This document shows, piece after piece, positions 62,478-63,996 of a DNA stretch of 64,000 nt. The position numbers and the translations under genes were made by a program. Position 1 is the stretch's first letter. Each line of letters opens with the position of its first letter. Under the pieces are notes generated by a model that was given only the letters and a program-made list of their open reading frames with translations, was not told the DNA's origin and did not search any database. Origin of the DNA: Podarcis liolepis (lineage: Eukaryota); NCBI GenBank assembly GCA_965112155.1, contig OZ218099.1; one strand, written 5' to 3'.

Positions 62478-62583
62478 TCAGTTGTAAAGATCATCATCGC
62501 CCTCCTCTTGGAAGAGGCTTCCTTGGCCACTGCTGCTTCCACTGTTTCCCTCTCCACTGGTGCTCTGCTTTCCAGATGGAAAC
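62478..62583 (-). CDS. VCP/p97-like last coding exon with C-terminal HbYX motif
   Basis: tctccacAG|G acceptor on the - strand, phase 2. Encodes (R)FPSGKQSTSGEGNSGSSSGQGSLFQEEGDDDLYN then TGA. Confidence 0.93.
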
Positions 62584-63442
62584 CTGTGGAGATAAAGAAT
62601 GGCCTTGGTTTCATGCAAGAGAAAGTTGGGTCATTCTGTTTTATGAATGTGGGCACTGATCTGGTTGTACTCTACATAAACAAGGTGTTAAAATAATGTG
62701 GATGTGATGCAAATCCCAATGCACATAAAAACCCATCCCGTTTAAAGTAATGCAATATGGAGGGACTGTATCCTCACTCAGGTGCTAATTCTAATGTGCA
62801 TCTGAATGCACATCTAATTTATACCTGCAATTCAGAGTCTGCAGGTACCGCCTGTGGATCTCCATAGCTGGGTCAGGGCAATGCTGTTTTTGAATGGTCT
62901 TTTGTTTATTTTAGCTTGTGTGTGTGTGTTTAATTCTATTGCACTTATTTTGAATGGTACCCTTTATTTTGTATATGGAATTTAACATCTTAAACTAACT
63001 TGAGAGCCCTCACTGGGTCATACACTTAATAATAAAAAGTATTATTTTCAGTTGGTTGGGATGATGGAATGCAACCCTCGGAAATCTTGATGGTACTGTT
63101 ATTATTTAATTTATTTAATTTGTTAGTACCTTTATCCTGCCCAAGGCAACCCAAAGCAACTTACAAAAGTTAGCAGAGTGACAAGGTAGATAGTAGAGAG
63201 TCAAGCTACATAGTAGAGTCAAGCTGAGGTTCCTGTATCTTGTTTCAAAGAACAAACTTCCCCCTATCCTAGGAAAGGGGAACCTAGGAATGTTGTTGAA
63301 CTTCAGCCTTCACTAATCCCAGCCATGGGAGTTCTGGTCAAACAACATCTGTGGGGCCAAGTTCCTCACCCAGGCCCTGTCCACTGCACTGAAGTGAAAC
63401 TCTAGCTTGGGGCAGAGGAAGCAAAAAGTTCTCCAACATTAC

Positions 63443-63594
63443 CTGAAGTTGCCAAAGCCACGGCTTTGCTGTAATGTTTGGGCAAACATCTCATACTTGC
63501 GTATGTCATTATCACTGACAGAGCGGCGTGCAAAGCGCATTGCTTCCTCAAAGTGATCGCGTCGGATCTCTGGCACGGGGTCATAATCGTCATC
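63443..63594 (-). CDS. VCP/p97-like penultimate coding exon
   Basis: tgatAG|GAT...TTCAG|GTAATG on the - strand. The 152 nt encode [50 protein letters not shown](R). Confidence 0.96.
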
Positions 63595-63837
63595 CTATCA
63601 CAAAAGGGCAGGGGGGGAAATGTTGTTGAGCTGCATCCTTACAAGCTCCAAAGCCCTGTGAGATCAATGCAATCGAGGACACTGTGGCCCCACGATGGGG
63701 GGTGGCCATAAAGTTCCCAGAATACTATGCAGAATATGTTACTGAGGAGGGCATGTTACTGAGAAGAGCAGGGCATGAGGCAATGGAAGGAATCCTGCCT
63801 GGCCCTGTTGGGATGTGGGGAAGTCTCACTACCATAC

Positions 63838-63996
63838 CATGGCGGCACATTTATGACGCTGACGCTCCCGTTCTGCCTTAATCTCCATCTCGATGGCCTC
63901 ACGGATGGCCAGTTTGCAGGCACGCTGGCATATTTCAGTGAGGTCAGCACCTGAGAAGCCATGTGTGATCTTGGCCAAGTAATTCAAGTCCACATC
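63838..63996 (-). CDS. VCP/p97-like (transitional ER ATPase paralogue) coding exon, D2 helical subdomain; gene continues beyond window end
   Basis: Reverse complement reads acAG|GAT...ATG|GTATGG. The 159 nt encode [53 protein letters not shown], homologous to the antepenultimate exon of human VCP. Confidence 0.95.

What the first reader, a model, noticed from the sequence alone, without database searches (positions are those of the whole stretch)
62478..63996. Hidden second VCP/p97 gene: an intact, intron-containing paralogue absent from the ORF track
Seen: three - strand exons with canonical GT-AG sites and matching phases (0,0,2) translate without stops into the p97 D2 C-terminus, ending DDDLYN. 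Known: amniote VCP orthologues are almost invariant, and human VCP sits beside FANCG, not PTGER1. This copy has many substitutions relative to human VCP as I recall it (LEFLAKMTN>[36 protein letters not shown]>[33 protein letters not shown]>GFGNFR) yet keeps VCP intron positions, so it is not a retrocopy. Inference: an ancient duplicate (possibly an ohnologue related to the fish vcp-like gene) that is retained in lizards, has no counterpart at the human locus, and is probably functionally uncharacterised. It could form distinct or mixed p97 hexamers.
Basis: partly seen in the sequence, partly recalled or inferred. Interest (0 to 1): 0.8.

Follow-up and report, generated by a model that had tools for sequence, protein, structure and literature searches.

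The report
Second VCP/p97 gene, already annotated
The window's end holds the last three exons of a real, expressed second copy of the protein-unfolding ATPase VCP/p97. This ancient vertebrate duplicate is kept in lizards, turtles, amphibians and fishes. It is already annotated in public databases, but no paper I could search describes it.

Summary
Three minus-strand exons (63996-63838, 63594-63443, 62583-62478) with GT-AG borders and phases 0, 0, 2 encode the last 138 residues of a p97-like protein ending DDDLYN.

Each exon peptide is an exact substring of RefSeq XP_028573113.2, [quoted passage not shown]. A 50-protein tree puts that protein in a clade (SH-aLRT/UFBoot 100/100) with sharks, rays, ray-finned fishes (where NCBI names it zgc:136908), caecilians, newt, turtles and squamates. 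That clade is separate from canonical gnathostome VCP (98.7/100). Amphioxus and invertebrates lie outside both.

RNA reads support both introns (61 and 29 spliced reads), a splice to an upstream exon, and a roughly 650-nt 3'UTR behind an AATAAA. The same RNA runs also carry canonical VCP mRNA, encoding NPSAMEVEE and FPSGNQGGAG. So this is neither the only VCP gene nor a pseudogene.

The gene is not hidden or new: it is annotated in many genomes. What remains open is its function. I found no paper on it, and a zebrafish vcp knockout paper never mentions it. Absence from mammals and birds was not proven here.

The parts
63838..63996 (-). Third-from-last coding exon of the VCP paralogue: 53 codons, [12 protein letters not shown]...RQRHKCAAM, the D2 AAA-lid region. 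The acceptor AG at 63998-63997 belongs to an intron that runs off the window.
   Evidence: Translation. Pfam AAA_lid_3 at 1.7e-15. Aligns to p97 residues 668-718. 34 X24 reads and contigs continue upstream into sequence encoding ANLRKSPIA(K) (table 7). Exact substring of XP_028573113.2.
63595..63837 (-). Intron of 243 nt, GT..AG on the minus strand.
   Evidence: Joint that skips 243 nt: 29 reads at 24 start places in X24, 5 reads in X22, and contigs in X15 and X16. Depth is about 0 in X24.
63443..63594 (-). Second-from-last coding exon: [50 protein letters not shown] plus AG of a split Arg codon. This is the C-terminal helix region.
   Evidence: Pfam Vps4_C at 6.3e-06. About 19% of X24 reads on this exon carry the window's letters; the rest are cross-mapping canonical VCP mRNA (table 3).
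62584..63442 (-). Intron of 859 nt, GT..AG on the minus strand. It holds a dispersed repeat copy at about 63096-63179.
   Evidence: Joint that skips 859 nt: 61 reads at 37 start places in X24, 4 reads in X22, and contigs in X15 and X16. Depth is 0-7x against 65x on the neighbouring exon.
62478..62583 (-). Last coding exon: (R)FPSGKQSTSGEGNSGSSSGQGSLFQEEGDDDLYN, with stop TGA at 62480-62478. It encodes the flexible acidic tail with the DDDLY motif.
   Evidence: Depth about 65x in X24. Identical to the Podarcis muralis protein.
61820..62477 (-). 3'UTR, about 650 nt. AATAAA lies at 61847-61842. The transcript end is approximate.
   Evidence: X24 depth is 40-95x from 61836 to 62477 and 3x below 61835, nearly all with the first mate on + (so the RNA is from the minus strand). 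The X15 contig ends at 61800. Sequence read.
57891..58811 (+). Neighbour: first coding exon of PTGER1 (prostaglandin E receptor EP1), convergent with the VCP paralogue.
   Evidence: Pfam 7tm_1 at 1e-23. The best PDB hit is the EP1 receptor, 9m1h, at 6.6e-80, ahead of the FP receptor at 2e-73.
1934..2119 (+). Neighbour: the GIPC1 PDZ-domain exon.
   Evidence: Pfam PDZ. The best PDB hit is GIPC1, 5v6b, at 8e-30, against GIPC2 at 3.5e-18.

Best explanation
The window's end carries the 3' end (last three coding exons plus 3'UTR) of an expressed VCP/p97 paralogue of a lacertid lizard. By identity the lizard is Podarcis muralis or a very close relative. The gene is the tetrapod orthologue of the fish gene annotated as zgc:136908.

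It arose by duplication of VCP after the split from amphioxus and before cartilaginous and bony vertebrates separated. That timing and its location fit a whole-genome-duplication twin (ohnologue).

It encodes a full type II AAA+ ATPase: an N domain, D1, D2 and an acidic DDDLY tail. All catalytic motifs are intact.

Inferred, not shown: it most likely works as p97 does, as a hexameric, cofactor-guided, ubiquitin-dependent unfoldase, and its tail can probably still dock PUB/PUL-domain cofactors.
For: Shown:
- Exons, phases and splice sites are as described.
- All three exon peptides are exact substrings of XP_028573113.2 / A0A670K7J5 of Podarcis muralis.
- An LG+F+G4 tree of 50 proteins over 807 columns gives the paralogue clade 100/100 and canonical gnathostome VCP 98.7/100. 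Amphioxus and invertebrates lie outside at 98.8/99. Inside the paralogue clade, sharks are sister to bony vertebrates at 93.5/97. A quick PMSF tree gives the same two clades at SH-aLRT 100 and 97.
- Conservation is strong. The Podarcis paralogue is 93.9% identical to the turtle copy, 90.2% to the shark copy and 89.2% to the cyprinid copy, but 85-88% identical to canonical VCP.
- The Walker A/B, pore-loop and arginine-finger motifs of D1 and D2 are exact in 23-25 of 25 paralogues, and the two sensor-1 (ATNRP) motifs in 21 and 24.
- All 5 of the 24 clade-diagnostic columns that fall in the window's exons show the paralogue state: I679, M722, D725, N771, G801 in Crotalus tigris numbering.
- The gene is transcribed and spliced. 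The reads have the strand orientation expected of a minus-strand RNA, use both introns, splice to an upstream exon, and cover a 3'UTR behind an AATAAA. An X15 contig of 2255 nt runs 2093 nt upstream of exon A.
- Canonical VCP mRNA is in the same runs, seen in loose ends that encode NPSAMEVEE and FPSGNQGGAG.
- Both genes are annotated in one assembly in Crotalus horridus and in Naja naja.
- The two exonic differences between the window and the runs, at 63880 and 63988, are both synonymous. Introns differ by about 1.2%.
Against: - Only 138 of about 807 codons lie in this window. The rest is inferred from the database protein and from RNA contigs whose letters I could not read.
- The ohnologue (2R) origin rests on the timing in the tree and on synteny recalled from memory. 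No canonical shark VCP was in the tree.
- The lamprey fragment joins canonical VCP only weakly (85/95) and is unresolved in the PMSF tree.
- Nothing here tests ATPase activity, hexamer formation or cofactor binding.
- The tissue of the RNA runs is unknown.
Confidence: 0.93

Rival explanations
1. This is the species' only VCP gene, merely more diverged than in other amniotes.
For: Only the C-terminal exons are visible in the window, and no tool could search this genome for a second locus.
Against: In the same RNA runs (organisms C and A), a second and more abundant transcript cross-maps on exon B with third-codon-position differences. It continues into NPSAMEVEE and FPSGNQGGAG, which is the canonical VCP sequence. 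The tree separates the two clades at 100/100. Crotalus horridus and Naja naja each have both genes annotated.
Confidence: 0.01
2. It is a pseudogene or partial duplicate: a transcribed remnant of a VCP copy with no protein function.
For: The upstream exons are outside the window and were not read in this genome. The paralogue is less abundant than canonical VCP on exon B, at about 19% of reads in bulk RNA and about 3% in single-cell RNA.
Against: The reading frame is open across all three exons. The peptides are identical to a full-length 807-aa RefSeq model. The protein is 90% identical between lizard and shark, and the catalytic motifs are intact across 25 species. Splicing is correct, and an mRNA contig reaches 2.1 kb upstream. 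The only exonic differences between the window and the runs are synonymous.
Confidence: 0.03
3. It is a recent duplication of VCP within squamates or reptiles, or a retrocopy, rather than an ancient vertebrate duplicate.
For: Mammal- and bird-centred knowledge has a single VCP, so a lineage-specific gain is the naive expectation.
Against: The introns rule out a retrocopy. Orthologues with the same diagnostic residues occur in sharks, rays, bichir, sturgeon, gar, teleosts, coelacanth, lungfish, amphibians and turtles. Their tree follows the species tree.
Confidence: 0.02

Closest known systems
Canonical VCP/p97 (transitional endoplasmic reticulum ATPase; CDC48 in yeast, TER94 in flies)
   Same: Same domain plan and length (807 against 806 aa). 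It is 85-88% identical overall. The Walker, pore-loop and arginine-finger motifs of D1 and D2 are identical, as are the C-terminal helix [21 protein letters not shown] and the DDDLY tail motif.
   Different: It is a separate locus, beside PTGER1 and GIPC1, and a separate clade (100/100). There are 24 fixed differences between the clades, for example YPVEYPDKF against YPVEHPDKF, REAIE against RESIE, and a last residue of N or Q against G. It evolves about 2.5 times faster: tetrapod-cyprinid identity is 89% against 96% for canonical VCP. Its Gly/Ser-rich tail linker differs.
zgc:136908 of zebrafish and other ray-finned fishes (NCBI name), also annotated as 'transitional endoplasmic reticulum ATPase-like'
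   Same: Same clade in the tree, with the same diagnostic residues (GFGNFR, REAIEx[11 protein letters not shown]). These are orthologues of the lizard gene.
   Different: The fish proteins end in DDDLYQ, while tetrapods and sharks end in DDDLYN. Identity to the lizard protein is about 89-91%.
XP_028573113.2 / UniProt A0A670K7J5, 'transitional endoplasmic reticulum ATPase-like' [Podarcis muralis]
   Same: All three exon peptides of the window are exact substrings of it. This is the same gene.
   Different: None in the 138 residues compared. The UniProt model carries a spurious 122-residue N-terminal extension.

Membership tests
VCP/p97/CDC48 family of type II AAA+ ATPases | A D2 AAA-lid and C-terminal helix homologous to p97 residues about 668-772 | tested here: met
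   phmmer against PDB p97 chains gives E about 1e-26 for exon A and about 8e-26 for exon B. Pfam AAA_lid_3 scores 1.7e-15 and Vps4_C 6.3e-06.
VCP/p97/CDC48 family of type II AAA+ ATPases | Two AAA modules with Walker A/B, sensor, arginine-finger and pore-loop motifs, plus a CDC48 N domain | tested here: met
   These parts are not in the window. They were tested on the database protein that contains the window's exon peptides, and on 24 orthologues. The Walker, pore-loop and arginine-finger motifs are exact in 23-25 of 25, and the two sensor-1 motifs in 21 and 24. Precomputed Pfam hits include PF02359, PF02933 and PF00004.
VCP/p97/CDC48 family of type II AAA+ ATPases | An acidic C-terminal tail ending in DDLYx, the docking site for PUB/PUL cofactors in p97 | tested here: met
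   The window encodes ...EEGDDDLYN followed by a stop. Exact DDDLY is present in 21 of 25 paralogues, and the other 4 have EDDLY or DEDLY. The last residue is N or Q in place of G. Binding itself was not tested.
VCP/p97/CDC48 family of type II AAA+ ATPases | Hexameric ATPase and unfoldase activity | not testable with these tools
   This needs biochemistry.
zgc:136908-type VCP paralogue clade (vertebrate second VCP) | Groups with the paralogue clade and not with canonical VCP in a rooted tree | tested here: met
   The Podarcis muralis protein sits inside the squamate group of the paralogue clade. The paralogue split scores 100/100 and the canonical clade 98.7/100. The quick PMSF tree gives SH-aLRT 100 and 97.
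zgc:136908-type VCP paralogue clade (vertebrate second VCP) | Clade-diagnostic residues within the exons present in the window | tested here: met
   Five of five diagnostic columns in this region show the paralogue state: I679, M722, D725, N771, G801.
Ohnologue pair from the vertebrate whole-genome duplications | Duplication dated between the amphioxus split and the gnathostome radiation | tested here: met
   The tree topology fits. Caveats: there is no canonical shark sequence in the set, and the lamprey placement is weak.
Ohnologue pair from the vertebrate whole-genome duplications | The two copies lie in paralogous chromosome blocks | not tested
   The window shows GIPC1 - PTGER1 - VCP paralogue.

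The most novel reading that the evidence does not exclude
Most jawed vertebrates other than mammals and birds run two p97 systems. The second p97 has kept every catalytic motif for about 450 million years and is co-expressed with VCP. It may have a specialised role, such as its own tissue, cofactor set or substrates. It may also form mixed hexamers that tune p97 activity. If so, zebrafish and other non-mammalian VCP disease models are being read without accounting for a second p97. The loss in mammals and birds would then be a real change in the proteostasis toolkit.
Probability: 0.3. Interest if true: 0.6.

Novelty: already known. Interest (0 to 1): 0.35.

Why it matters
p97/VCP is a central proteostasis machine and a disease gene (multisystem proteinopathy, ALS). 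It is also a drug target and is normally treated as a single-copy gene in vertebrates. The data here show a second, highly conserved and expressed p97 gene in lizards, turtles, amphibians, lungfish, coelacanth, ray-finned fishes and sharks.

The gene is annotated, but I found no paper describing it. A zebrafish vcp knockout study does not mention it (PMC9223409).

Tried and rejected
- Representative search. The search of protein representatives with exon A returned mostly read-through ORF fragments of genomic contigs. These showed a related lizard copy (P0001) and fish-type fragments, but gave no names or taxa.
I could not read the loci of other species, test synteny elsewhere, or get DNA for dN/dS.
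- Length limit. The length window of the search for homologous proteins blocked any direct search from the exon peptides. I reached full-length relatives in two steps instead. First I searched the C-terminal region of P0053, a marmoset PIGO-VCP chimera. Then I searched with the Protobothrops paralogue P0208.
- Literature. Eight searches found nothing on the paralogue: 'transitional endoplasmic reticulum ATPase-like', zgc 136908, VCP with ohnolog, VCP paralog phrases, and zebrafish with vcp and paralog.
- Tree runs. The 'careful' PMSF tree did not finish in two 300-s runs on one CPU. I used the quick PMSF tree plus my own IQ-TREE run under LG+F+G4 with 1000 ultrafast bootstraps.
- Joined exons. 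Exons were searched and compared one at a time by reference.
- Rejected readings: sole VCP gene, pseudogene, retrocopy, squamate-specific duplicate. See the rival explanations.

Full report
**What is in the sequence**

On the minus strand, the last 1.5 kb of the window holds three open exon segments with canonical splice sites.

- Exon A is 63996-63838. It follows the acceptor cAG at 63998-63997 and has 53 codons, [53 protein letters not shown]. Its donor is GTATGG.
- Exon B is 63594-63443. It follows the acceptor TGATAG and holds DDDYDPVPE...SRGFGNF plus AG of a split codon. Its donor is GTAATG.
- Exon C is 62583-62478. It follows the acceptor CCACAG. Its first G completes AGG (Arg), then comes FPSGKQSTSGEGNSGSSSGQGSLFQEEGDDDLYN and a TGA stop.
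The 'Q' at 63999-63997 is the end of the upstream intron.

Pfam calls AAA_lid_3 on exon A and Vps4_C on exon B. phmmer against PDB chains aligns exon A to p97 residues 668-718 and exon B to 724-772, with E-values near 1e-26.

**Which gene it is**

A HMMER scan of 1.84 billion representatives with exon A gave mainly read-through ORFs of genomic contigs. P0001 is 96% identical and comes from a related lizard. P0011, P0025 and P0031 share the REAIEAEIxAERQRQ signature.

The word-index search cannot reach 806-aa proteins from a 54-aa query. So I first used the C-terminal region of P0053, a marmoset PIGO-VCP read-through model. That search split the vertebrate hits into two groups:

- canonical VCP, at 86-100% identity in this region;
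- a second group at 67-75%, named 'zgc:136908' or 'transitional endoplasmic reticulum ATPase-like'. It includes a pit viper (P0208), a gecko, sharks, bichir and zebrafish.

Searching with P0208 and listing cluster members gave the family's spread:

- many snakes and lizards, including Podarcis muralis XP_028573113.2 / A0A670K7J5, P. lilfordi, Phrynosoma, Phrynocephalus, Hemicordylus and Lerista;
- turtles;
- caecilians, newt and axolotl;
- lungfish and coelacanth;
- bichir, sturgeon, paddlefish, gar and many teleosts;
- sharks and rays.

Each of the window's three exon peptides is an exact substring of the 807-aa P. muralis RefSeq protein.

**Paralogue or orthologue**

I built a tree of 25 paralogue-type, 18 canonical, one lamprey and 6 outgroup proteins over 807 columns.

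- Under LG+F+G4, the paralogue clade has SH-aLRT/UFBoot 100/100 and canonical gnathostome VCP 98.7/100. Amphioxus and invertebrates lie outside at 98.8/99.
- The quick PMSF tree agrees, with SH-aLRT 100 and 97.
- Inside the paralogue clade the branching follows the species tree. Sharks and rays are sister to bony vertebrates (93.5/97). Ray-fins are 99.7/100 and tetrapods 98.9/100. Turtles plus squamates are 95.6/100.

So the duplication predates the split of cartilaginous and bony vertebrates and postdates amphioxus. The lamprey fragment joins canonical VCP only weakly (85/95).

The identities tell the same story.

| Comparison | Identity |
|---|---|
| Podarcis paralogue vs turtle paralogue | 93.9% |
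| Podarcis paralogue vs caecilian paralogue | 93.3% |
| Podarcis paralogue vs shark paralogue | 90.2% |
| Podarcis paralogue vs cyprinid paralogue | 89.2% |
| Podarcis paralogue vs canonical VCP | 85-88% |
| Canonical VCP, bat vs chicken | 98.7% |
| Canonical VCP, bat vs carp | 96.0% |

Twenty-four columns are fixed differently in the two clades. The five that fall in the window's exons (I679, M722, D725, N771, G801) all show the paralogue state. Outgroups show that GFGNFR is ancestral and that canonical GFGSFR is the derived form.

**Is it alive, and is canonical VCP there too**

I laid reads on 61500-63999 at 80% likeness. In the bulk RNA run X24, nearly all reads lie with the first mate on +, the orientation expected of a minus-strand RNA in most stranded libraries.

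- Depth is 40-95x over 61836-62477, about 65x on exon C, 0-7x in the introns and about 35x on exon A.
- Both introns are spliced exactly as predicted. 61 reads at 37 start places join 62583|63443, and 29 reads at 24 start places join 63594|63838. The joints are also seen in X22 and in contigs of X15 and X16.
- At 63998, 34 reads and two contigs continue into letters that encode ANLRKSPIA(K), which is the upstream exon of the paralogue protein. One X15 contig carries 2093 nt upstream of exon A.
- Depth falls from 40x to 3x just past an AATAAA at 61847-61842. That gives a 3'UTR of about 650 nt.

On exon B a second population of reads differs at sixteen places, all spaced by multiples of three. 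It makes up about 81% of reads in X24 and about 97% in X22. It runs on into letters that encode NPSAMEVEE on one side and FPSGNQGGAG on the other, which is canonical VCP. Both genes are therefore expressed in the same samples of two organism labels.

These shares are rough, because the tool silently drops human-like reads.

The only exonic differences between the window and the runs are 63880 A>G and 63988 G>A. Both are synonymous (ATT>ATC and GAC>GAT). Intron contigs differ by about 1.2%.

**How it most likely works**

Shown:
- The Walker A/B, pore-loop and arginine-finger motifs of D1 and D2 are exact in 23-25 of 25 paralogues, and the two sensor-1 motifs in 21 and 24. The few misses include visibly broken gene models such as the Phrynosoma one.
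- The C-terminal helix is exact in 23 of 25.
- The tail keeps DDDLY exactly in 21 of 25, and the other four have EDDLY or DEDLY.

Inferred:
- The protein is a hexameric, cofactor-guided unfoldase like p97.
- Its tail can probably still bind PUB/PUL-domain cofactors. In p97 these grip the Leu-Tyr of the tail; that point is from my own knowledge and was not tested. The change of the last residue from G to N or Q may tune that binding.

Whether it forms its own hexamers or mixes with VCP is open.

**Surroundings**

The window also holds a GIPC1 PDZ exon (best PDB hit GIPC1, 8e-30) and the first coding exon of PTGER1 (best PDB hit EP1, 6.6e-80). Both are on the plus strand, so PTGER1 and the VCP paralogue converge.

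From memory, human 19p13.12 reads DNAJB1-GIPC1-PTGER1-PKN1 with no VCP-like gene, and 9p13.3 reads DNAJB5-VCP-FANCG-PIGO. That would make the two VCP loci members of paralogous blocks.

**Novelty**

The gene is annotated in RefSeq and UniProt for this very genus and for dozens of other species, so it is already known as a sequence. A zebrafish vcp knockout study never mentions a paralogue.

No bird or mammal appeared among the paralogue-type hits or named cluster members. But one 90% cluster has 86 members of which only 15 were shown, so absence there is likely, not proven.

**Verdict**

It is wrong in calling the gene hidden or lizard-specific. Interest is modest: an under-studied but already catalogued gene.

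Noticed in passing
window 63096-63179 (inside intron 2): Reads of both directions, and many contigs with 6-7 other letters per roughly 58 nt, pile up only here (tables 2 and 8). This is a copy of a dispersed repeat, not part of the gene.
   Followed up: no
window 55479-56116, + strand: Two overlapping ORFs of 110 and 115 aa have no Pfam hit. By eye they resemble the C-terminal part of a LINE ORF2, so this is probably a transposon remnant between GIPC1 and PTGER1.
   Followed up: no
window 61500-62337: In run X16, a 1915-nt contig (depth 69) continues past the AATAAA and beyond 61500, while X24 depth drops there. This is either a longer 3'UTR isoform or the 3'UTR of the convergent PTGER1. Contigs carry no strand.
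   Followed up: partly
protein P0053 (UniRef, Callithrix jacchus, named PIGO): This database model fuses a PIGO N-terminus to the C-terminal half of canonical VCP. It is a read-through mis-annotation that fits VCP lying next to PIGO in primates.
   Followed up: no
proteins P0205 and P0378 (Naja naja); P0162 and P0387 (Crotalus horridus): In the cobra, canonical VCP and the paralogue are both recorded on contigs of the same length (309,871,788). In the rattlesnake they are on contigs of different lengths (259,862,213 and 131,329,427). It is unclear whether the cobra copies share a chromosome.
   Followed up: no
proteins P0274 and P0367 (812 aa, turtle-like): Two paralogue-clade proteins are listed without any name or accession although NCBI and UniRef hold them. 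P0274 is sister to the turtles in the tree.
   Followed up: no
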